Below, in pieces: positions 3,725 to 17,264 of a DNA stretch of 64,000 nucleotides. The position numbers and the translations under genes are program-made. The first letter of the stretch is position 1. Each line of letters starts with the position of its first letter. The DNA lies in the sequence record NC_019401.1. One strand, given 5' to 3'. Under the pieces are notes generated by a model. The model searched no databases and was not told the DNA's origin. It was given only the letters and a program-made list of their open reading frames with translations.

Positions 3725-3838
3725 GTGGAGTTCGTCTAGCGGCCCAGGACACGAAAAGCGATTCTTGACTAAGAATCTTACGGCATTTATAACTTTCATT
3801 TCACGAACGTAACATGGGTTCGAATCCCATACTCCACT
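3725..3838 (+). tRNA. tRNA-Glu(TTC) interrupted by a 41-nt insertion (3754-3794) at position 28/29
   Basis: GTGGAGT/ACTCCAC acceptor; Glu-type D arm; A26-C-G|insert|TTC-ATTTCAC-GAA-CG; T arm ATGGG-TTCGAAT-CCCAT. Confidence 0.85.
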
Positions 3839-5419: not shown

Positions 5420-5546
5420 GGCGAGTTAGCTCAGTGGTAGAGCACGTATGAAACCCAGGATTCCTGTACTTGAATCCCGCAGCAACTATAACTCTCAAGC
5501 CTTTTAAGCTCGTGGTCGGGGCGTTCGAATCCCCCACTCGCCGCCA
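5420..5546 (+). tRNA. tRNA-Lys(TTT) interrupted by a 51-nt insertion (5447-5497) at position 28/29
   Basis: GGCGAGT/ACTCGCC acceptor; GCTC/GAGC D stem; ACG|insert|AGC-CTTTTAA-GCT-CGT; T-loop; CCA encoded. Confidence 0.85.
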
Positions 5547-10549: not shown

Positions 10550-10556
10550 AAATAAA

Positions 10557-10585
10557 TGAAACGATAAAAATTTTTGTGGTATAAT
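10557..10585 (+). promoter_or_regulatory. TGAAAC-N17-TATAAT promoter (RNA-gene class)
   Basis: TGAAAC 10557-62; TGTGG-TATAAT 10575-85. Confidence 0.75.
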
Positions 10586-10602: not shown

Positions 10603-10722
10603 GGAATCTTACAGCAAAAATAATTAATTTTTGATGAAAACAAAACGACGGCGGTTCGAATCCCCACCCACGATTTGCCTTATTTAAAGTGGGAGCATGG
10701 TGCTGGATAAACAAGAGATTCC
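10603..10722 (+). ncRNA. ACAGCAA element, permuted tRNA-like form
   Basis: GGAATCT/AGATTCC outer helix, ACAGCAA, T-loop GGTTCGAATCC, CCCAC/GTGGG acceptor-like helix. Confidence 0.75.
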
Positions 10723-10745: not shown

Positions 10746-11282
10746 ATGAACATATACAAAATTGCAAAAGAATTGATGAATAAGCACAATCTACAGGATT
10801 GGTCTTTCGAAATTTATGAAAGTTCAAATAAGCGTGTTCCTGGAACAACCAATACAATTGGAATGTGCATCTATCATGAAAAAGTTATCGCCATTTTAGA
10901 AGCGGTTGCTTATAGTCGTAGTGAAGAATATGTTCGTAGTTTAATATTGCATGAAATTGCACATGCATTAGCTGGTCATGAAAATGGTCATAATGAAGTA
11001 TGGCAGAAAATTGCAATAGAAATTGGTTCTAAACATATCACATCATGTGCAAACATGATTGAGTTTTTAAACCATAAAAATACAATCCGCAATTGTACTC
11101 ATCCGTATGTTTGGAAATTTATGAAGTATTTTTCAAATACTGATGAGTTAGTATTCAACTTAAACCGTATACACGGTAAAAGTACACAGTACTGGTATAA
11201 TGAATATCTAAGGATTTTAAAGTTTCAGGAACGTTTAAAAAAACGTAAAAAAATTGAAACGAATCAAAAATTTGTGGTATAA
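10746..11282 (+). CDS. SprT-like zinc metalloprotease
   Basis: LILHEIAHAL...GHNEVWQKIA (HExxH plus GH..W); start moved to ATG 10746. Confidence 0.8.
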   Translation: MNIYKIAKELMNKHNLQDWSFEIYESSNKRVPGTTNTIGMCIYHEKVIAILEAVAYSRSEEYVRSLILHEIAHALAGHENGHNEVWQKIAIEIGSKHITSCANMIEFLNHKNTIRNCTHPYVWKFMKYFSNTDELVFNLNRIHGKSTQYWYNEYLRILKFQERLKKRKKIETNQKFVV

Positions 11283-11283
11283 T
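11255..11283 (+). promoter_or_regulatory. TGAAAC-N17-TATAAT promoter (RNA-gene class)
   Basis: TGAAAC 11255-60; TGTGG-TATAAT to 11283. Confidence 0.75.
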
Positions 11284-11300: not shown

Positions 11301-11418
11301 GAAATCTTACAGCAAACAATATCTTATATTTTTTATGCGAAAAAAACGATGTGGTTCGAATCCACAACAACCATGTTGCTATGTTGGTTGTGCATGGGGC
11401 TAGAAAACAACAGATTTC
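11301..11418 (+). ncRNA. ACAGCAA element, permuted tRNA-like form
   Basis: GAAATCT/AGATTTC helix; ACAGCAA; TGTGG-TTCGAAT-CCACA; ACAACCA/TGGTTGT. Confidence 0.75.
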
Positions 11419-11771: not shown

Positions 11772-11878
11772 AAGAATCGCACAGCAAACATAAATCTTAT
11801 ATATTTCATTTGGCGAAAAACACCTTCGGTTCAATTCCGATTTACCACTGGTTGTGGGGATAGAAAAACACGATTCTT
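11772..11878 (+). ncRNA. ACAGCAA element with Gln-like anticodon arm and T arm (permuted)
   Basis: AAGAATCG/CGATTCTT; TTTC-ATTTGGC-GAAA; TCGG-TTCAATT-CCGA. Confidence 0.7.
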
Positions 11879-11905: not shown

Positions 11906-11985
11906 GAAGTGGGATTTAAACAGCAAACTAACCCTTTACTGAAAATCATATAGTAGATGGATTACTCGGAATTTCGATTCCCTTC
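11906..11985 (+). ncRNA. ACAGCAA element, degenerate
   Basis: GAAG(T)GGGA/TCCCTTC helix; ACAGCAA at 11920. Confidence 0.5.
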
Positions 11986-12106
11986 TTAATCATTACTCGC
12001 ACAGTATTAAAACAGTGTATTGTTTAAGTTCGTCAACTTATTCAATTATCCTTTTATTAAATCCCGTATAATAAAGTACTTAAATCCTATTGGACAGTAC
12101 TTTTAT

Positions 12107-12201
12107 GGAAGATTGGCAGAGTCTGGTTTATTGCACCGCACTTGAAATGCGGCGAACTAGTAACCCTAGTTCCTACGGTTCAAATCCGTAATCTTCCTCC
12201 A
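12107..12201 (+). tRNA. tRNA-Ser(TGA)
   Basis: GGAAGAT/ATCTTCC; CCGCA-CTTGAAA-TGCGG; long variable arm; CCA. Confidence 0.95.
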
Positions 12202-12207
12202 AATCTT

Positions 12208-12330
12208 GGGAAAGTAGCTCAGTTGGTAGAGCAGGTAAGAAAACCCAAATTACTGTATTGTAATTTCACAGCAACCATACTTCATCCACTTTTAATGGCC
12301 TGGTCGTTGGTTCAAATCCAACCTTTCCCA
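12208..12330 (+). tRNA. tRNA-Lys(TTT) interrupted by a 50-nt insertion (12236-12285) at position 28/29
   Basis: GGGAAAG/CTTTCCC; GCTC/GAGC; AGG|insert|CCA-CTTTTAA-TGG-CCT; GTTGG-TTCAAAT-CCAAC. Confidence 0.85.
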
Positions 12331-12333
12331 CAC

Positions 12334-12395
12334 AGAATCTAACAGCAAACCTTATTTTATCAAACTTTTACTTTGAAACCAAAATAATAGATTCT
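12334..12395 (+). ncRNA. minimal ACAGCAA element displaying a Lys(UUU) anticodon stem-loop
   Basis: AGAATCTA/TAGATTCT; CAAA-CTTTTAC-TTTG. Confidence 0.7.
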
Positions 12396-14053: not shown

Positions 14054-14192
14054 AAGAATCTAACAGCAATTCAATTGTTAACTAAAAATAGCTGCCTCGC
14101 GGCATGTAGGTTCGAATCCTACGAACTATGTCAGTACTGAATAGTGATGGTGAAACAGGTAGACACGGCTATCAACACAAACATAGATTCTT
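14054..14192 (+). ncRNA. ACAGCAA element enclosing a circularly permuted tRNA-Leu-like sequence
   Basis: 3' half (ATAGC, variable arm, GTAGG-TTCGAAT-CCTAC) precedes 5' half (ATAGTGA-TG-GTG-AAACAGGTAGA-CAC-G-GCTAT). Confidence 0.8.
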
Positions 14193-14310: not shown

Positions 14311-14414
14311 TGGAATTCAACAGCAATTCATACTATCCCGCCGCATGTCGCAGTTTCGAGTCCTGCCTTCACTTCGGTATGGTAGATCAGCGGCCTAAAA
14401 AGAAATAAATTCCA
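14311..14414 (+). ncRNA. ACAGCAA element enclosing a degenerate permuted tRNA
   Basis: TGGAATT/AATTCCA; GCGGC/GCCGC anticodon stem; TTCG-capped acceptor remnant; paralogue of 15460-15580. Confidence 0.7.
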
Positions 14415-14428
14415 GTATTAATTAAAAA

Positions 14429-14436
14429 TATAAATA
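14429..14436 (+). promoter_or_regulatory. T4-type late promoter
   Basis: TATAAATA about 30 nt upstream of the ART gene. Confidence 0.55.
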
Positions 14437-14466
14437 TTCCTATATAACTTTTAATGGGGTATTGTT

Positions 14467-15066
14467 GTGGAAATGAAAAAGCTGATGGAAGATATTTCTG
14501 CCATCATGGAAGGACAAATGCCAGGATACTACTATCACGGCACTAAACAACCGATTCACACTTTTAGTGATGAATTTGTTGGAAAGGGTAATGACCAATA
14601 CGGTCCAGGAATTTACTTCACAAGTAATCCTAGTACTGCATTTGGTTATACTGATAAATCACCAAATGGTGTGGTTTATCAATGCACTCTGAATATTAGA
14701 AAAGAATTGTCCAAGAAACAAAGAATTAATAAAGCAGTACTTTTGAAGTTAATGAAAAGTACTCCAGACGATGAAGCATATACCAATTGGGGTGAACACC
14801 CAAACCGTGCATATCAAAATGCTTTAAATTCATATATGGATGCAGATGATAACATGTATGATGCATTAATGAATGTATGGTATGATTGGTATAGGTATCA
14901 CGGAACAGAATTTGTAAGAAAGCTTGTTGAATTGGGTTATGATGCTTTTACACATAAATTTGAAAGCGGTGAGTTATTTGTTATAGTATATAACCCTGCA
15001 AGTATTAATGTTGTTAAATCATATACTGTAGAACAAGCTAGAAATGAACTACTTCAATCTAAATAA
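14467..15066 (+). CDS. ADP-ribosyltransferase-fold protein (ART-PolyVal-like)
   Basis: YYHGT...G...GPGIYFTS..A..Y motif. Confidence 0.7.
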   Translation: MEMKKLMEDISAIMEGQMPGYYYHGTKQPIHTFSDEFVGKGNDQYGPGIYFTSNPSTAFGYTDKSPNGVVYQCTLNIRKELSKKQRINKAVLLKLMKSTPDDEAYTNWGEHPNRAYQNALNSYMDADDNMYDALMNVWYDWYRYHGTEFVRKLVELGYDAFTHKFESGELFVIVYNPASINVVKSYTVEQARNELLQSK

Positions 15067-15092
15067 TATAGTACTAACTATGTTATAAGGGA

Positions 15093-15452
15093 TTGGGAAT
15101 GTTCAAGACTCGTTTAAAAGTTGAATTAATCAACAACGAAGGAAAGAAGTGGAAACTTATTGAAGATTTGGTTTACGAAGATAAAAAGCACGGAAGAATC
15201 ACTATTCCTGCTGGATTCGAAACTGACTTTGCAAGTGTACCTAGAATACCAGTTGTGTTTGAATTGGTAGGGGATCGTGGTCATGCAGCAGCAACACTAC
15301 ATGATTGGTTATATCATAATGATAATCTATCACGCAAAGAAGTTGATAAGATTCTACTTCAAGCTTTAAGAGATACGAATGTAGGTAAAGTTCGTTCATA
15401 TTTGATGTACTTTGGTGTACGAGGATTTGGTTGGATGTTTTTTAAGAAATAA
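15093..15452 (+). CDS. DUF1353 family protein
   Basis: IPAGFETDFASVPR...AAATLHDWLY...MYFGVRGFG. Confidence 0.85.
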   Translation: MGMFKTRLKVELINNEGKKWKLIEDLVYEDKKHGRITIPAGFETDFASVPRIPVVFELVGDRGHAAATLHDWLYHNDNLSRKEVDKILLQALRDTNVGKVRSYLMYFGVRGFGWMFFKK

Positions 15453-15459
15453 AAGAATT

Positions 15460-15580
15460 TGGAATTCAACAGCAAATCAATTCTATCCACGCAACATGTC
15501 GCAGGTTCAAGTCCTGCCAGTACTTTCGAGTACTGTAGCTCAGTTGGTAGAGCAGTCGCCTATAAAAGAAATGAATTCCA
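15460..15580 (+). ncRNA. ACAGCAA element enclosing a near-perfect circularly permuted tRNA
   Basis: GCAGG-TTCAAGT-CCTGC, CAGTACT-TTCG-AGTACTG, TA-GCTC-AGTTGGTA-GAGC; TGGAATTCA/TGAATTCCA outer helix. Confidence 0.85.
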
Positions 15581-15871
15581 GTTTTAATTTATATTGGAGA
15601 AAAATATGTCAAAAATTATTAAGTCTATTAAAAGTGATTTGGAAAAGATGGTATCTTTAGGATTAGCATCAACTGAAACGGTTAATAAAGTTATTCCAAT
15701 TTCTAATGTTTCTTCGAAGAAGAATTCTAAAAAGAAATAAATTCAAGTTTTAATCAAATTCACCAGTCGTACTATGGTTTGACACGGATAGCATGTTATC
15801 CTATTAAGGTCAGAATAGAATACGTATTAGTTCCTTGGTCGGAACTTATGTAAACTCAATTTGTACTAATT

Positions 15872-15925
15872 TAGAATCTAACAGCAATTAAAACTTCTCG
15901 GATATAGAAAAAACAATAGATTCTA
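15872..15925 (+). ncRNA. minimal ACAGCAA element
   Basis: TAGAATCTA/TAGATTCTA; TTCT-CGGATAT-AGAA hairpin. Confidence 0.7.
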
Positions 15926-16198: not shown

Positions 16199-16262
16199 GG
16201 AATCTAACAGCAACCATATATTGAACTCAACTGTTAATTGAAAACCTCAAAAAATGGATTCC
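16199..16262 (+). ncRNA. minimal ACAGCAA element displaying an Asn(GUU) anticodon stem-loop
   Basis: GGAATCTA/TGGATTCC; TCAA-CTGTTAA-TTGA. Confidence 0.75.
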
Positions 16263-16279
16263 CGCCTTTTTAAAATAAA

Positions 16280-16308
16280 TGAAACACCACAAAAAAATGT
16301 GGTATAAT
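16280..16308 (+). promoter_or_regulatory. TGAAAC-N17-TATAAT promoter (RNA-gene class)
   Basis: Directly upstream of tRNA-Asn. Confidence 0.75.
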
Positions 16309-16401: not shown

Positions 16402-16465
16402 AAGAATCTTGCAGCAAACATATTAAACATATTTTTTGGGTAAATAAACGTTAAAACGGATTCTT
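16402..16465 (+). ncRNA. minimal GCAGCAA element displaying a Pro(UGG) anticodon stem-loop
   Basis: AAGAATCT/GGATTCTT; ATTT-TTTGGGT-AAAT. Confidence 0.7.
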
Positions 16466-16682: not shown

Positions 16683-16754
16683 GCATCCATCGTATATCGG
16701 CTATTATAATTGGCTTCCACCCAATAGAACGGAGTTCGACCCTCCGTGGATGCT
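16683..16754 (+). tRNA. tRNA-Gly(TCC)
   Basis: GCATCCA/TGGATGC; ATTGG-CTTCCAC-CCAAT; U73. Confidence 0.93.
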
Positions 16755-17208: not shown

Positions 17209-17264
17209 TAGAATCTAACAGCAATTAAAACTCATTTGGATAATATGAAAAACAATAGATTCTA
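17209..17264 (+). ncRNA. minimal ACAGCAA element (near-copy of 15872-15925)
   Basis: TAGAATCTAACAGCAATTAAAACT...GAAAAACAATAGATTCTAG. Confidence 0.7.

What the first reader, a model, noticed from the sequence alone, without database searches (positions are those of the whole stretch)
14311..15580. Paralogous permuted tRNAs with acceptor ends sealed by a UUCG tetraloop
SEEN: 15460-15580 has a perfect T arm, a perfect 7-bp acceptor CAGTACT/AGTACTG capped by TTCG, a perfect D arm, and stem GTCGC/GCAAC. Joining GTCGC-CT to TCCAC-GCAAC gives loop CT-TCC-AC, identical to the tRNA-Gly loop at 16683, i.e. a 33/34 junction. A 28/29 junction is also possible but pairs worse. 14311-14414 is a more decayed paralogue with GCGGC/GCCGC and the same TTCG cap. 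A 4-nt cap leaves no room for a leader and trailer. INFERENCE: the product is a covalently closed, uncharged tRNA mimic rather than a translating tRNA. It could act as a decoy or inhibitor for synthetases, RelA or nucleases.
Basis: partly seen in the sequence, partly recalled or inferred. Interest (0 to 1): 0.9.

Follow-up and report, generated by a model that had tools for sequence, protein, structure and literature searches.

The report
tRNA-mimic Y RNA of jumbo phage
The 'permuted tRNA' is real, but it is best read as a small phage RNA of the Y-RNA type: a tRNA look-alike with a sealed acceptor end, mounted on a conserved stem that in many unrelated phages sits next to a Ro60-like RNA-binding protein gene; this phage carries a dozen such RNAs, plus three real tRNAs with the same stem built into them.

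Summary
The window is the last 64 kb of Cronobacter jumbo phage GAP32. The features at 15460-15580 are exactly as described, and five helices are supported by covariation across phages. The RNA is not a split tRNA waiting to be joined.

Its two ends pair in a 9-bp basal helix followed by an invariant ACAGCAA. Eleven more RNAs at 10.6-17.3 kb share this module, most without a full tRNA-like part. Three tRNA genes (Glu, Lys, Lys) carry it, hairpin-capped, inserted between anticodon-stem positions 28 and 29.

In Enterococcus, Listeria, E. coli, Mycobacterium and Vibrio phages, and in IMG/VR contigs, the same module clusters beside DUF2828/DUF7788 genes on the gene strand. GAP32's copy of that protein, outside the window, models as a Ro60 fold and lies next to an RNA ligase gene.

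Rfam YrlA is the only family hit, at 44.7 bits, below its threshold of 69.

Verdict: a YrlA-like tRNA-mimic Y RNA. It is a new variant of a known kind, with a different protein partner family, a different motif, expansion to many copies, and tRNA chimeras. Binding to the Ro-like protein and the function are inferred, not shown.

The parts
15460..15580 (+). E15462, a Y-RNA-like small RNA with a complete tRNA-like module. Sub-features: P1 5' strand 15460-15468; ACAGCAA 15469-15475; P2 GCAAC 15491-15495 pairing with GTCGC 15555-15559; variable loop 15496-15500; T arm 15501-15517; closed acceptor stem 15518-15524 / 15529-15535 with TTCG loop 15525-15528; D arm 15538-15553; A-rich strand 15560-15571; P1 3' strand 15572-15580.
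   Evidence: Sequence. MFE z = -2.81. Rfam YrlA 44.7 bits, E 4e-8. Orthologues at 82-90% identity in 9 related jumbo phages. Covariation in all five helices.
14311..14414 (+). E14313, a decayed paralogue. It keeps P1 (TGGAATT/AATTCCA), ACAGCAA at 14320-14326, P2 GCCGC 14340-14344 / GCGGC 14390-14394, an imperfect T arm 14350-14366, and a broken acceptor hairpin with TTCG at 14373-14376. The D arm is lost.
   Evidence: Sequence. Model R1 81.3 bits. MFE z = +0.21.
14054..14192 (+). E14056, a third tRNA-like member of class II type: P1 AAGAATCTA/TAGATTCTT, ACAGCAA, P2 ATAGC/GCTAT, a variable-arm hairpin TGCC-TCGC-GGCA, T arm GTAGG-TTCGAAT-CCTAC, a closed acceptor-like hairpin, and a Leu-like D arm.
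   Evidence: Sequence. Pattern scan. Fold. Model R1 23.8 bits here; R1 scores the elements at the matching position in pEa_SNUABM_12 and fHe-Yen9-03 at 74.5 and 68.1 bits.
10603..10722 (+). Family member with P1 and ACAGCAA, a T-arm-like hairpin and further hairpins. A strong sigma-70-type promoter lies directly upstream (extended -10, ending at 10585).
11301..11418 (+). Family member with a T arm (GTGG-TTCGAAT-CCAC) and a 7-bp closed acceptor-like hairpin. The best promoter match of the region (11 of 12, TG extended -10) ends at 11283.
11772..11878 (+). Family member with P1 AAGAATCG/CGATTCTT, ACAGCAA and a T-loop-like hairpin.
11911..12065 (+). The longest family member (155 nt), with P1 GGGATTTAA/TTAAATCCC, ACAGCAA and several hairpins.
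12334..12395 (+). Short family member: P1, ACAGCAA, a small P2 hairpin and an A-rich strand.
15872..15925 (+). Minimal family member (54 nt).
   Evidence: Model R1 33.9 bits.
16199..16262 (+). Short family member with a 6-bp P1, GGAATC/GATTCC.
   Evidence: Model R1 26.1 bits.
16402..16465 (+). Short family member carrying the variant GCAGCAA, directly upstream of tRNA-Gln.
17209..17264 (+). Minimal family member, a near twin of 15872-15925. Its P2 covaries with that copy (UCAU/AUGA versus UUCU/AGAA).
5420..5546 (+). tRNA-Lys(UUU) gene with the same module inserted, hairpin-capped, at 5447-5497 between anticodon-stem positions 28 and 29. CCA is encoded.
   Evidence: Orthologues in 8 related phages.
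12208..12330 (+). Second tRNA-Lys(UUU) gene with the module inserted at 28/29 (12236-12285).
   Evidence: Rfam tRNA 49.5 bits spanning 123 nt..
3725..3838 (+). Unannotated tRNA-Glu(UUC)-like gene with the module inserted at 28/29 (3754-3794). It carries the motif variant ACGGCAT.
   Evidence: Orthologues are annotated tRNA-OTHER or tRNA-Phe(aaa) in CBB and pEa_SNUABM_12.

Best explanation
E15462 (15460-15580) is a Y-RNA-like small RNA of phage GAP32.

**Architecture.** Its 5' and 3' ends pair in a 9-bp basal helix (P1). P1 opens into an asymmetric internal loop, with invariant ACAGCAA on the 5' strand and an A-rich run on the 3' strand. A 5-bp helix (P2, equivalent to a tRNA anticodon stem) then carries a tRNA elbow: variable loop, T arm, a 7-bp acceptor stem closed by a loop, and a D arm. 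It has no anticodon loop and no free CCA end, so it cannot decode.

**Inferred mechanism.**
1. The P1 + ACAGCAA module is the docking site for the phage's Ro60-fold protein GAP32_176 (DUF2828/DUF7788). That gene lies outside the window, next to an RNA ligase gene.
2. The tRNA-shaped module presents a tRNA elbow to tRNA-recognising factors, such as modification enzymes, RNase P, the CCA-adding enzyme, RNA repair enzymes, or host tRNA-targeting nucleases.
3. The RNA would thereby tether or gate the Ro-like protein, as YrlA-type Y RNAs are thought to do with Rsr.

**Context.** E14313 is a decaying duplicate. E15462 is one of 12 such RNAs in the phage's tRNA island.

**Shown here (computationally):** the structure and its covariation; the family; the genomic coupling of the module to DUF2828 genes in other phages; and the Ro60 fold of the modelled protein.

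**Inferred:** transcription of this copy, binding to GAP32_176, and any downstream function.
For: - **Structure.** Sequence and MFE z = -2.81. Across 11 elements from 7 phages, 95.3% of cells are paired and 23 of 30 pairs change on both sides; slid controls give 24-42%. The most conserved bases are the tRNA elbow bases (T54, T55, C56, A58, G18, G19, A14, A21) and CAGC-A of the motif.
- **Similarity to YrlA.** It is the only Rfam family hit: 44.7 bits, E 4e-8, full-length alignment. The corresponding elements of an Enterococcus and a Mycobacterium phage hit it too, at 45.2 and 37.9 bits.
- **Family in the window.** The motif GAATYYWRCAGCAA gives 16 matches against 0.63 expected. The helix + CAGCAA + complement pattern gives 15 plus-strand hits, 1 minus-strand hit, and 0.87 +/- 0.87 in random sequence.
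- **Coupling to the protein gene in sampled phages.** There are 4, 3, 4, 3 and 1 copies directly beside the DUF2828 gene, on its strand, in Enterococcus EfV12-phi1, Listeria A511, E. coli wV8, Mycobacterium Kingsolomon and Vibrio ValKK3.
- **Coupling in metagenomic contigs.** In 80 IMG/VR loci there are 87 hits on the gene strand against 14 on the other strand, and 68 of the 87 lie within 1 kb of the gene. Of 41 element-bearing loci, 22 have no tRNA gene nearby.
- **Cross-phage model hits.** Model R1, built from GAP32-group sequences, finds the Enterococcus copy at 69.6 bits, the Kingsolomon copy at 67.4 bits, and metagenomic copies just upstream of the gene at up to 69.8 bits.
- **The protein.** GAP32_176 matches DUF2828 + DUF7788. 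Its AF2 model has pLDDT 83. The top four PDB matches are all Ro60/Rsr over the full length (2I91, 2NVO, 1YVR; E 4e-8 to 3e-7; TM 0.35 for D. radiodurans Rsr 2NVO, 0.52-0.56 for the X. laevis entries). Its neighbour is an RNA ligase, and a CCA-adding enzyme gene lies 4 kb away.
- **Precedent.** YrlA has the same T / closed-acceptor / D order and binds Rsr (PMC4201824). Phage phiLo Ro60 binds two adjacent Y-like RNAs that have a terminal stem and a motif in an internal bulge (PMC12135203).
Against: - No experimental evidence of any kind was available: no transcription, no binding data.
- In GAP32 and its relatives the RNAs are not next to the Ro-like gene. They lie about 200 kb away on the linear record, and no element is found within 6 kb of the gene.
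- The Rfam YrlA score is below the gathering threshold (44.7 vs 69).
- The published Ro-binding motif GNCGAAN0-1G / CGAA is absent; ACAGCAA is a different sequence.
- DUF2828 is not Pfam TROVE. Sequence searches against the PDB found nothing by phmmer, and the profile found only a weak vWA-domain match to phage Ro60 (E 0.16). The Ro60 relationship therefore rests on a predicted fold.
- E15462 has no promoter of its own in the scan, so it would have to be cut out of a longer transcript.
Confidence: 0.72

Rival explanations
1. The P1 + ACAGCAA module is a processing or splicing signal rather than, or as well as, a protein-docking platform. An unknown endonuclease would cut on both sides of the internal loop and a phage RNA ligase would seal the ends. 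In the three tRNA genes this would remove a 41-51-nt intron at 28/29. In the stand-alone elements it would circularise the inner module, so E15462 would become a covalently closed tRNA-like circle.
For: - The same module sits inside tRNA-Glu and two tRNA-Lys genes at exactly 28/29. Deleting it in silico restores perfect 5-bp anticodon stems and normal cloverleaves.
- Anticodon-stem pairs 29-31/39-41 covary among orthologues (AGC/GCT, ACA/TGT, ACT/AGT).
- An arm of that size in the anticodon stem should be hard to fit into a ribosome (inference).
- GAP32 encodes an RNA ligase beside the Ro-like gene.
Against: - No endonuclease candidate and no bulge-helix-bulge motif were found. P1 is 9 contiguous pairs flanked by 22-nt and 12-nt loop strands.
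- Joining the ends of E15462 by analogy does not produce a 7-nt loop with U33, and the loop sequence is not conserved.
- Most family members have only a tiny hairpin as inner module, which would give circles of about 20-40 nt with no evident use.
- The tight linkage is to the Ro-like gene, not to a nuclease.
- To my knowledge, protein-dependent tRNA splicing is unknown in bacteria and their phages.
Confidence: 0.13
2. A genuine permuted tRNA gene of the Cyanidioschyzon / Thermofilum type. The 3' half lies upstream of the 5' half. The transcript would be circularised at the anticodon loop, opened at the acceptor loop by RNase P and 3' trimming, given CCA, and used in translation, for example as tRNA-Gly(UCC).
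For: - The order of the halves is permuted.
- The acceptor stem has 7 bp. [quoted passage not shown]
- GAP32 encodes a CCA-adding enzyme.
- CT+TCCAC equals the loop of the phage tRNA-Gly.
Against: - The putative anticodon is different in every orthologue, whereas the flanking P1, ACAGCAA and elbow bases are conserved.
- The tRNA-like body is Lys-like, not Gly-like: its D arm (TAGCTCAGTTGGTAGAGCAGT) is identical to E. coli tRNA-Lys as I recall that sequence, and the T-arm region is very similar (recalled sequence, not checked with a tool).
- The acceptor loop varies from 4 nt to a 30-nt insert.
- The same flanks occur on RNAs with no tRNA features.
- ARAGORN and Rfam tRNA do not call it; the partial tRNA hit scores 20 bits.
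Confidence: 0.04
3. Non-functional debris: remnants of two adjacent decayed tRNA genes (T arm of one, D arm of the next), or a MITE-like mobile element with terminal inverted repeats.
For: - The element lies in a dense tRNA island.
- Dimeric tRNAs are a known false positive for YrlA-type models (PMC4201824), and R1 does pick up one such false hit at 12140-12258.
- E14313 is visibly decaying.
Against: - The two acceptor strands are complementary to each other over 7 bp and covary.
- The element is conserved at 82-90% identity across genera in a syntenic position.
- All copies are on the gene strand: 15 to 1 in the window and 87 to 14 in metagenomic loci.
- The helix sequence differs between copies through compensatory changes, while the one-sided ACAGCAA stays fixed. 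This is the signature of selection on an RNA, not of transposon ends.
Confidence: 0.03

Closest known systems
YrlA (Rfam RF02553), the tRNA-like Y RNA bound by bacterial Ro60 (Rsr); also reported in 22 phages that encode TROVE proteins (Chen et al. 2014, PMC4201824)
   Same: - A terminal 5'-3' stem followed by an internal loop or motif.
- A tRNA-like domain in the order variable region, T arm, closed acceptor stem-loop, D arm, with conserved elbow nucleotides and the G15:C48 pair.
- No anticodon loop.
- More than one Y RNA per genome.
- Linkage to a Ro60-fold protein, and in bacteria to RNA ligase operons.
- The M. smegmatis member also has a 7-bp acceptor stem.
   Different: - It scores 44.7 bits against a gathering threshold of 69.
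- The motif is ACAGCAA in the loop just after the helix, not GNCGAAN0-1G in the helix strand.
- The partner protein family is DUF2828/DUF7788, not Pfam TROVE.
- In GAP32 the RNAs lie about 200 kb from the protein gene.
- There are 12 copies rather than 1-4.
- The module also occurs inside real tRNA genes.
Yrl1 and Yrl2 of Thermus phage phiLo with phiRo60 (NAR 2025, PMC12135203; PDB 9KOP, 9L5Y)
   Same: - Phage-encoded Ro60-fold protein with small RNAs just upstream of its gene.
- Stem, large internal bulge with a short conserved motif, then stem.
- That is the arrangement seen here in the Enterococcus, Listeria and metagenomic phages.
   Different: - A CGAA motif and a true TROVE protein.
- No tRNA-like domain is described.
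- Binding to Ro60 and host PNPase was shown experimentally there. Nothing has been shown for GAP32.
Permuted tRNA genes of the red alga Cyanidioschyzon merolae and of some archaea (own knowledge: Soma et al. 2007)
   Same: The 3' half of the tRNA-like sequence lies upstream of the 5' half, and the acceptor strands are linked by a short spacer.
   Different: - Those genes carry a complete, conserved anticodon loop split at a bulge-helix-bulge junction.
- They are circularised by the splicing endonuclease and ligase, and they yield decoding tRNAs.
- Here there is no conserved anticodon, no such junction, and the flanks form a conserved protein-type docking helix.
tmRNA and other tRNA mimics
   Same: A T arm and acceptor stem are used as a tRNA-shaped handle on a non-tRNA molecule.
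   Different: tmRNA has a free, chargeable CCA end and a reading frame. E15462 has a sealed acceptor end and no coding part.

Membership tests
YrlA / bacterial-type Y RNA | tRNA-like domain in the order V region, T arm, closed acceptor stem-loop, D arm, with tRNA elbow nucleotides | tested here: met
   Sequence. Full-length alignment to the RF02553 consensus. Covariation in the T, acceptor and D helices. T54, T55, C56, A58, G18, G19, A14 and A21 are invariant or nearly so in 13 elements.
YrlA / bacterial-type Y RNA | Reaches the curated score of the Rfam family model RF02553 (69 bits) | tested here: not met
   44.7 bits for 15473-15581, and no hit at gathering threshold. Related elements in other phages score 28-45 bits.
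YrlA / bacterial-type Y RNA | GNCGAAN0-1G (CGAA) motif in the 5' strand of the Ro60-binding module | tested here: not met
   The conserved motif is ACAGCAA, directly 3' of the basal helix. The Rfam consensus shows GGCGAAUG inside the helix.
YrlA / bacterial-type Y RNA | Encoded within about 4 kb of a Ro60 orthologue, on the same strand | tested here: not met
   GAP32's only match to the Ro-like query is at record 105937-107451. E15462 is at record 310123-310243. The criterion is met by homologous elements of Enterococcus, Listeria, E. coli, Mycobacterium, Vibrio and IMG/VR phages.
YrlA / bacterial-type Y RNA | Partner protein has the Ro60 ring (HEAT repeats + vWA domain) | tested here: met
   The AF2 model of GAP32_176 (pLDDT 83) has Ro60/Rsr as its top four PDB matches over the full length (E 4e-8 to 3e-7). 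By sequence it is DUF2828/DUF7788, not TROVE.
YrlA / bacterial-type Y RNA | Physically bound by the Ro60 orthologue; modified by TruB and DusA | not testable with these tools
   Needs co-immunoprecipitation or EMSA, and modification mapping.
Permuted tRNA gene | 3' half upstream of the 5' half, with acceptor strands linked by a spacer | tested here: met
   Sequence.
Permuted tRNA gene | Joining the ends restores a conserved 7-nt anticodon loop with U33 and a fixed anticodon | tested here: not met
   The candidate triplet is TCC, AAC, AAC, ATC, TCA in five orthologues. Only the AC/CC next to the stem is kept.
Permuted tRNA gene | Bulge-helix-bulge junction formed by leader and trailer | tested here: not met
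   Leader and trailer form 9 contiguous base pairs, separated from P2 by loop strands of 22 nt and 12 nt.
P1-CAGCAA RNA associated with DUF2828 genes (family defined here) | 7-9-bp terminal helix beginning RGA, CAGCAA 1-4 nt after it, variable inner hairpin or module, A-rich 3' strand, helix complement followed by G-T, on the gene strand | tested here: met

The most novel reading that the evidence does not exclude
The P1-ACAGCAA RNAs are a so-far undescribed, pan-phage class of Y RNAs. They serve a second, very large family of Ro60-fold proteins (DUF2828/DUF7788: more than 7,800 proteins in the protein search, 713 phage records).

In GAP32-like jumbo phages the class has expanded into a battery of at least 12 RNAs, plus three chimeras in which a complete tRNA-Glu or tRNA-Lys carries the docking hairpin in its anticodon stem. 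To my knowledge, tRNA-Glu and tRNA-Lys are the tRNAs most often cut by bacterial anticodon nucleases.

The system would tether tRNA mimics and real, cleavable tRNAs to a Ro-like/RNA-ligase repair machine. It could act as a decoy, a sensor or a repair platform against host tRNA-cleaving defences.
Probability: 0.3. Interest if true: 0.85.

Novelty: new variant of a known kind. Interest (0 to 1): 0.66.

Why it matters
- **An unsolved role.** Y RNAs and Ro60 are conserved from bacteria to humans, yet the job of the tRNA-like domain of bacterial Y RNAs is still unknown.
- **A second pairing.** If the reading here is right, a second Ro60-like protein family with its own RNA signature is widespread. 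It occurs in well-studied, tractable phages: Felix O1-like, Listeria A511, Enterococcus Schiekvirus, and cluster L mycobacteriophages.
- **A suggestive repertoire.** One jumbo-phage lineage offers tRNA-shaped, partly tRNA-shaped and minimal modules on one common docking stem, plus real tRNAs carrying that stem. That points to tRNA surveillance, repair or counter-defence.
- **Testable.** It makes the question testable with simple phage genetics.
- **Annotation.** It explains several mis-annotated 'tRNA-OTHER', 'tRNA-Phe(aaa)', 'Undet' and 127-nt 'tRNA-Lys' features in these genomes.

Tried and rejected
- **Standard annotation tools.** ARAGORN and Rfam at gathering thresholds report nothing at 14311-15580.
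- **Sequence searches for the protein.** phmmer of GAP32_176 against the PDB gave no hit. A 24-sequence profile gave only a marginal vWA-domain match to phage Ro60 (E 0.16). The fold comparison was needed.
- It was repeated without that row.
- **Elements near GAP32's own Ro-like gene.** None found within 6 kb.
- **Promoter and terminator readings.** I considered ACAGCAA as a phage promoter and the elements as terminators. I rejected both because every copy has a matching downstream complement that covaries, and the helices are AT-rich. Overall, the promoter/terminator scan found no more sites than in shuffles.
- **MITE and dimeric-tRNA readings.** Considered and rejected on strand bias and compensatory changes.
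- **Chance hits.** Four extra pattern hits in the window (9412, 24268, 26936, 54204) lie in coding sequence and lack the other family features. They match the chance expectation.
- **Literature.** Searches for DUF2828, Ro-like proteins and phage Y-like RNAs found no description of this RNA motif. The 2020 Annual Review on bacterial Ro60 could not be opened, and Burroughs & Aravind 2016 was not found in the library (not among the results), so prior description elsewhere cannot be excluded.
- **Splice-site pairing.** I read the sequences flanking the 28/29 inserts by eye for bulge-helix-bulge-like pairing and saw none (no tool run).
Full report
**Where the window comes from.** The window is identical to the last 64 kb of Cronobacter phage vB_CsaM_GAP32 (NC_019401, record 294664-358663). 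GAP32 is a 359-kb jumbo myovirus. The region holds the phage's tRNA island: 18 tRNAs by ARAGORN and 19 Rfam tRNA hits. The finding lies in two gaps of the published annotation, on either side of GAP32_436 and GAP32_437.

**Checking the observation.**
- The order at 15460-15580 is GCAAC, ATGTC, T arm GCAGG-TTCAAGT-CCTGC, CAGTACT, TTCG, AGTACTG, TA, D arm GCTC-AGTTGGTA-GAGC, A, GTCGC.
- The RNA fold forms the T arm, the closed 7-bp acceptor stem and the D arm. The energy beats all but 1 of 200 shuffles (z = -2.81).
- 14311-14414 is a recognisable but decayed copy: no D arm, a broken acceptor stem, z = +0.21.
The MFE and centroid structures pair them.
- The first flank is followed at once by ACAGCAA.

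**A family, not a pair.** The motif GAATYYWRCAGCAA occurs 16 times in the window against 0.63 expected. A stricter pattern requires a helix of at least 7 bp, CAGCAA 1-4 nt after it, and the exact complement within 200 nt.
- It gives 15 plus-strand hits and 1 minus-strand hit. Random sequence gives 0.87 +/- 0.87.
- Eleven of these hits, plus one copy with a 6-bp helix, lie between 10.6 and 17.3 kb.
- The four others are coding-region chance hits.

The 12 RNAs share the terminal helix (P1), ACAGCAA, an A-rich 3' strand, and G-T after the helix. Their inner parts differ:
- a full tRNA-like module (15460-15580);
- a decayed one (14311-14414);
- a class II, Leu-like one with a variable-arm hairpin (14054-14192);
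- modules with only a T arm and an acceptor-like hairpin (10603-10722, 11301-11418, 11772-11878);
- a long one (11911-12065);
- five minimal ones of 54-64 nt.

The two copies at 10603 and 11301 each sit about 17 nt downstream of the best sigma-70-type promoters of the region, which have a TG-extended -10. The element at 15460 has none and would have to be processed out of a longer transcript.

**Conservation and covariation.** Orthologues of E15462 exist at 82-90% identity, in the same position, in Erwinia phages pEa_SNUABM_12/19/44/47/49/50, Serratia BF, Xanthomonas XbC2, Yersinia fHe-Yen9-03/04, Erwinia Kaldavass and Pectobacterium CBB.
- Among these orthologues the GTCGC/GCAAC stem changes by compensation: T-A to C-G at 28-42, G-C to A-T at 30-40, and C.A to A-T at 29-41.
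- The T stem changes C-G to T-A.
- The acceptor loop is free to vary: TTCG, TTAATT, CTAG, or a 30-nt insert in CBB.

I built a covariance model (R1) from four orthologues with the five helices specified. Aligning its 11 best matches from 7 phages gives 95.3% paired cells and 23 of 30 pairs with changes on both sides. No shuffle reaches this, and slid registers give 24-42% paired. That alignment is fitted to the model, which inflates the numbers somewhat. The compensatory changes are also visible in the plain MAFFT alignment.

There is therefore no selection for an anticodon. In contrast, the tRNA elbow bases and the CAGC-A of the motif are invariant or nearly so.

**What it resembles.** The only Rfam family matching the region is YrlA (RF02553). 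It aligns end to end at 44.7 bits, E 4e-8 in the 2.6-kb search, below the curated 69 bits. YrlA is the bacterial Y RNA bound by the Ro60 orthologue Rsr. Its hallmark is exactly this arrangement: V region, T arm, closed acceptor stem-loop, D arm, mounted on a stem formed by the RNA's two ends. It is modified by TruB and DusA. In M. smegmatis, where the acceptor stem has 7 bp, it is opened by RNase P and receives CCA (PMC4201824).

The published definers beyond the tRNA-like domain are a GNCGAAN0-1G motif and a location within 4 kb of a TROVE gene on the same strand. E15462 meets neither.

**The link to a Ro60-like protein.** A distant blastn of E15462 unexpectedly matched the T / acceptor / D segment of about 25 Enterococcus Schiekvirus phages.

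In EfV12-phi1 the match is one of four consecutive elements. They have the same build (for example AAGAATCTA-ACAGCGA ... TAGATTCTT-GT) and end less than 300 nt upstream of a 510-aa 'RNA-binding protein' on the same strand. That protein is DUF2828 + DUF7788 with a weak vWA signal. It is 34% identical to the 'Ro-like RNA binding protein' of mycobacteriophages.

By tblastn, 713 phage records encode a relative, including GAP32 (record 105937-107451, GAP32_176) and all its relatives.

Four further phages were sampled:

| Phage | Copies | Position relative to the DUF2828 gene |
|---|---|---|
| Listeria A511 | 3 | immediately upstream |
| E. coli wV8 (Felix O1-like) | 4 | among the tRNAs just downstream |
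| Mycobacterium Kingsolomon | 3 | immediately downstream |
| Vibrio ValKK3 | 1 | overlapping the gene's ribosome-binding site and start codon |

Between these phages the helix sequence is completely different (GAATC, GAACG, GAGAGC, GACCAA, GGACAC and others, each with its exact complement). ACAGCAA is unchanged.

A systematic test used 80 IMG/VR contigs encoding the protein, with 4-kb flanks.
- There are 87 strict-pattern hits on the gene strand against 14 on the other strand.
- 68 of the 87 lie within 1 kb of the gene (49 upstream, 19 downstream).
- The nine GAP32-like contigs have none next to the gene.
- 22 of 41 element-bearing loci contain no tRNA gene at all. The RNAs therefore travel with the protein gene, not with tRNA genes as such.
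- R1 finds tRNA-like members directly upstream of the gene in five metagenomic phages, at up to 69.8 bits, and in EfV12 (69.6) and Kingsolomon (67.4).
- None of the short members matches any Rfam family even at E = 1.

**Is the protein Ro60-like?** Sequence methods barely see it. There is no phmmer hit in the PDB. The profile gives only E 0.16 to the vWA part of phage phiLo Ro60.

An AlphaFold2 model of GAP32_176 from a 23-sequence alignment has pLDDT 83 and pTM 0.80. Its four best PDB matches are all Ro60: X. laevis 2I91 chains A and B, 1YVR, and D. radiodurans Rsr 2NVO. They align over the whole length at E 4e-8 to 3e-7 and TM 0.52-0.56 for the frog entries (0.35 for Rsr). Everything after that is vWA domains only. 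GAP32 therefore encodes a Ro60-fold protein.

Its upstream neighbour is an RNA ligase (PF09414 with the PHA02142 OB domain). A CCA-adding enzyme gene lies 4 kb downstream. This echoes the rsr-yrlA-rtcB association of bacteria. It also echoes the view of Iyer et al. that TROVE proteins with a tRNA-like partner form an RNA-repair platform in some jumbo phages (PMC7824862). The phiLo study shows experimentally that a phage Ro60 binds two adjacent Y-like RNAs built as stem, motif-bearing internal bulge, stem (PMC12135203).

**How it most likely works.**
- Shown: a conserved, covarying RNA fold with a tRNA elbow and no decoding or accepting end; a shared docking-type module; tight genomic coupling of that module to a Ro60-fold protein family.
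- Inferred: GAP32_176 binds P1 and the ACAGCAA loop. The variable inner module then determines what the particle touches.
- For E15462 the module is a tRNA-Lys-like body. Its D arm is identical to E. coli tRNA-Lys as I recall that sequence; I did not test this against a database.
- It would be recognised by enzymes that read the tRNA elbow and acceptor stem.
- Because the acceptor stem has 7 bp, opening by RNase P as in M. smegmatis cannot be excluded.
- Whether the particle repairs RNA, recruits a nuclease such as PNPase, or soaks up a host factor cannot be decided here.

**The tRNA chimeras.** Three tRNA genes in the window carry the same module the other way round.
- The hairpin is capped, the acceptor end is open, and the module is inserted between positions 28 and 29 of the anticodon stem.
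- They are tRNA-Lys(UUU) at 5420-5546 (annotated as a 127-nt tRNA-Lys), tRNA-Lys(UUU) at 12208-12330, and an unannotated tRNA-Glu(UUC) at 3725-3838 with the motif variant ACGGCAT.
- Removing the insert in silico restores perfect anticodon stems.
- Orthologues exist in all relatives, and a similar one exists in Vibrio phage D479.
- In fHe-Yen9-03 the anticodon of one of them has become GAU.

These may be introns, which feeds the main rival explanation. Or they may be tRNAs that keep a Ro-docking arm. The data do not decide between the two.

**Verdict.**
It is wrong in treating it as a split tRNA to be joined into a circle.
- It works like a YrlA-type Y RNA. However, it fails three of that family's formal criteria: score, motif and adjacency. 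I therefore file it as a new variant of a known kind.
- I found no description of the ACAGCAA RNAs or of an RNA partner for DUF2828 proteins in the searchable literature.

Noticed in passing
window 3725-3838, 5420-5546, 12208-12330: Three tRNA genes, Glu(UUC) and two Lys(UUU), carry a 41-51-nt insert between anticodon-stem positions 28 and 29. The insert is the hairpin-capped form of the same helix + (A/G)CAGCAA module. The Glu gene is unannotated in NC_019401 and is missed by ARAGORN and Rfam. Whether these are introns or permanent docking arms is unknown.
   Followed up: partly
window 14467-15066 and 15099-15452: The two genes between the two reported elements encode an ADP-ribosyltransferase of the ART-PolyVal family (E 3e-11) and a DUF1353 protein annotated as 'tail assembly chaperone'. 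A 600-nt CDS sits in the same place, directly beside the tRNA-like RNAs, in CBB (annotated as similar to GAP32_436), pEa_SNUABM_12 and fHe-Yen9-03; only the GAP32 protein was scanned against Pfam.
   Followed up: partly
window 10556-10585, 11254-11283, 16279-16308: There are three near-consensus sigma-70 promoters with a TG-extended -10 (TGTGGTATAAT). Two drive Y-like RNAs directly and one drives tRNA-Asn.
   Followed up: no
L008 2941-2981 (Vibrio phage ValKK3): A single minimal helix-ACAGCAA element overlaps the Shine-Dalgarno sequence and start codon of the DUF2828 gene itself. In many IMG/VR phages an element ends 20-120 nt before the gene start. This suggests that the protein may also regulate its own translation.
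   Followed up: no
L005 1498-2049 (Listeria phage A511): A ROOL RNA match (87.5 bits, just under the 99.1-bit threshold) lies about 650 nt upstream of the three Y-like elements and the Ro-like gene, among tRNA genes.
   Followed up: no
L010 1427-1547 (Yersinia phage fHe-Yen9-03): The orthologue of the insert-bearing tRNA-Lys has the anticodon loop ATGATAA (GAU, Ile) with a covarying stem. These chimeric tRNAs therefore switch identity between phages. The annotation calls it 'tRNA-Undet'.
   Followed up: no
L004 4507-5772, 5941-7455 and 11399-12514 (GAP32 record 104503-112510, outside the window): The Ro60-fold gene GAP32_176 lies directly after an RNA ligase gene. It is near genes for a CCA-adding enzyme and a ribosome hibernation factor, forming an RNA-repair/translation neighbourhood.
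   Followed up: partly
window 12140-12258: Model R1 gives a weak hit (26 bits) across the junction of tRNA-Ser and the following tRNA-Lys. This is the expected 'dimeric tRNA' false positive for models of this architecture.
   Followed up: yes
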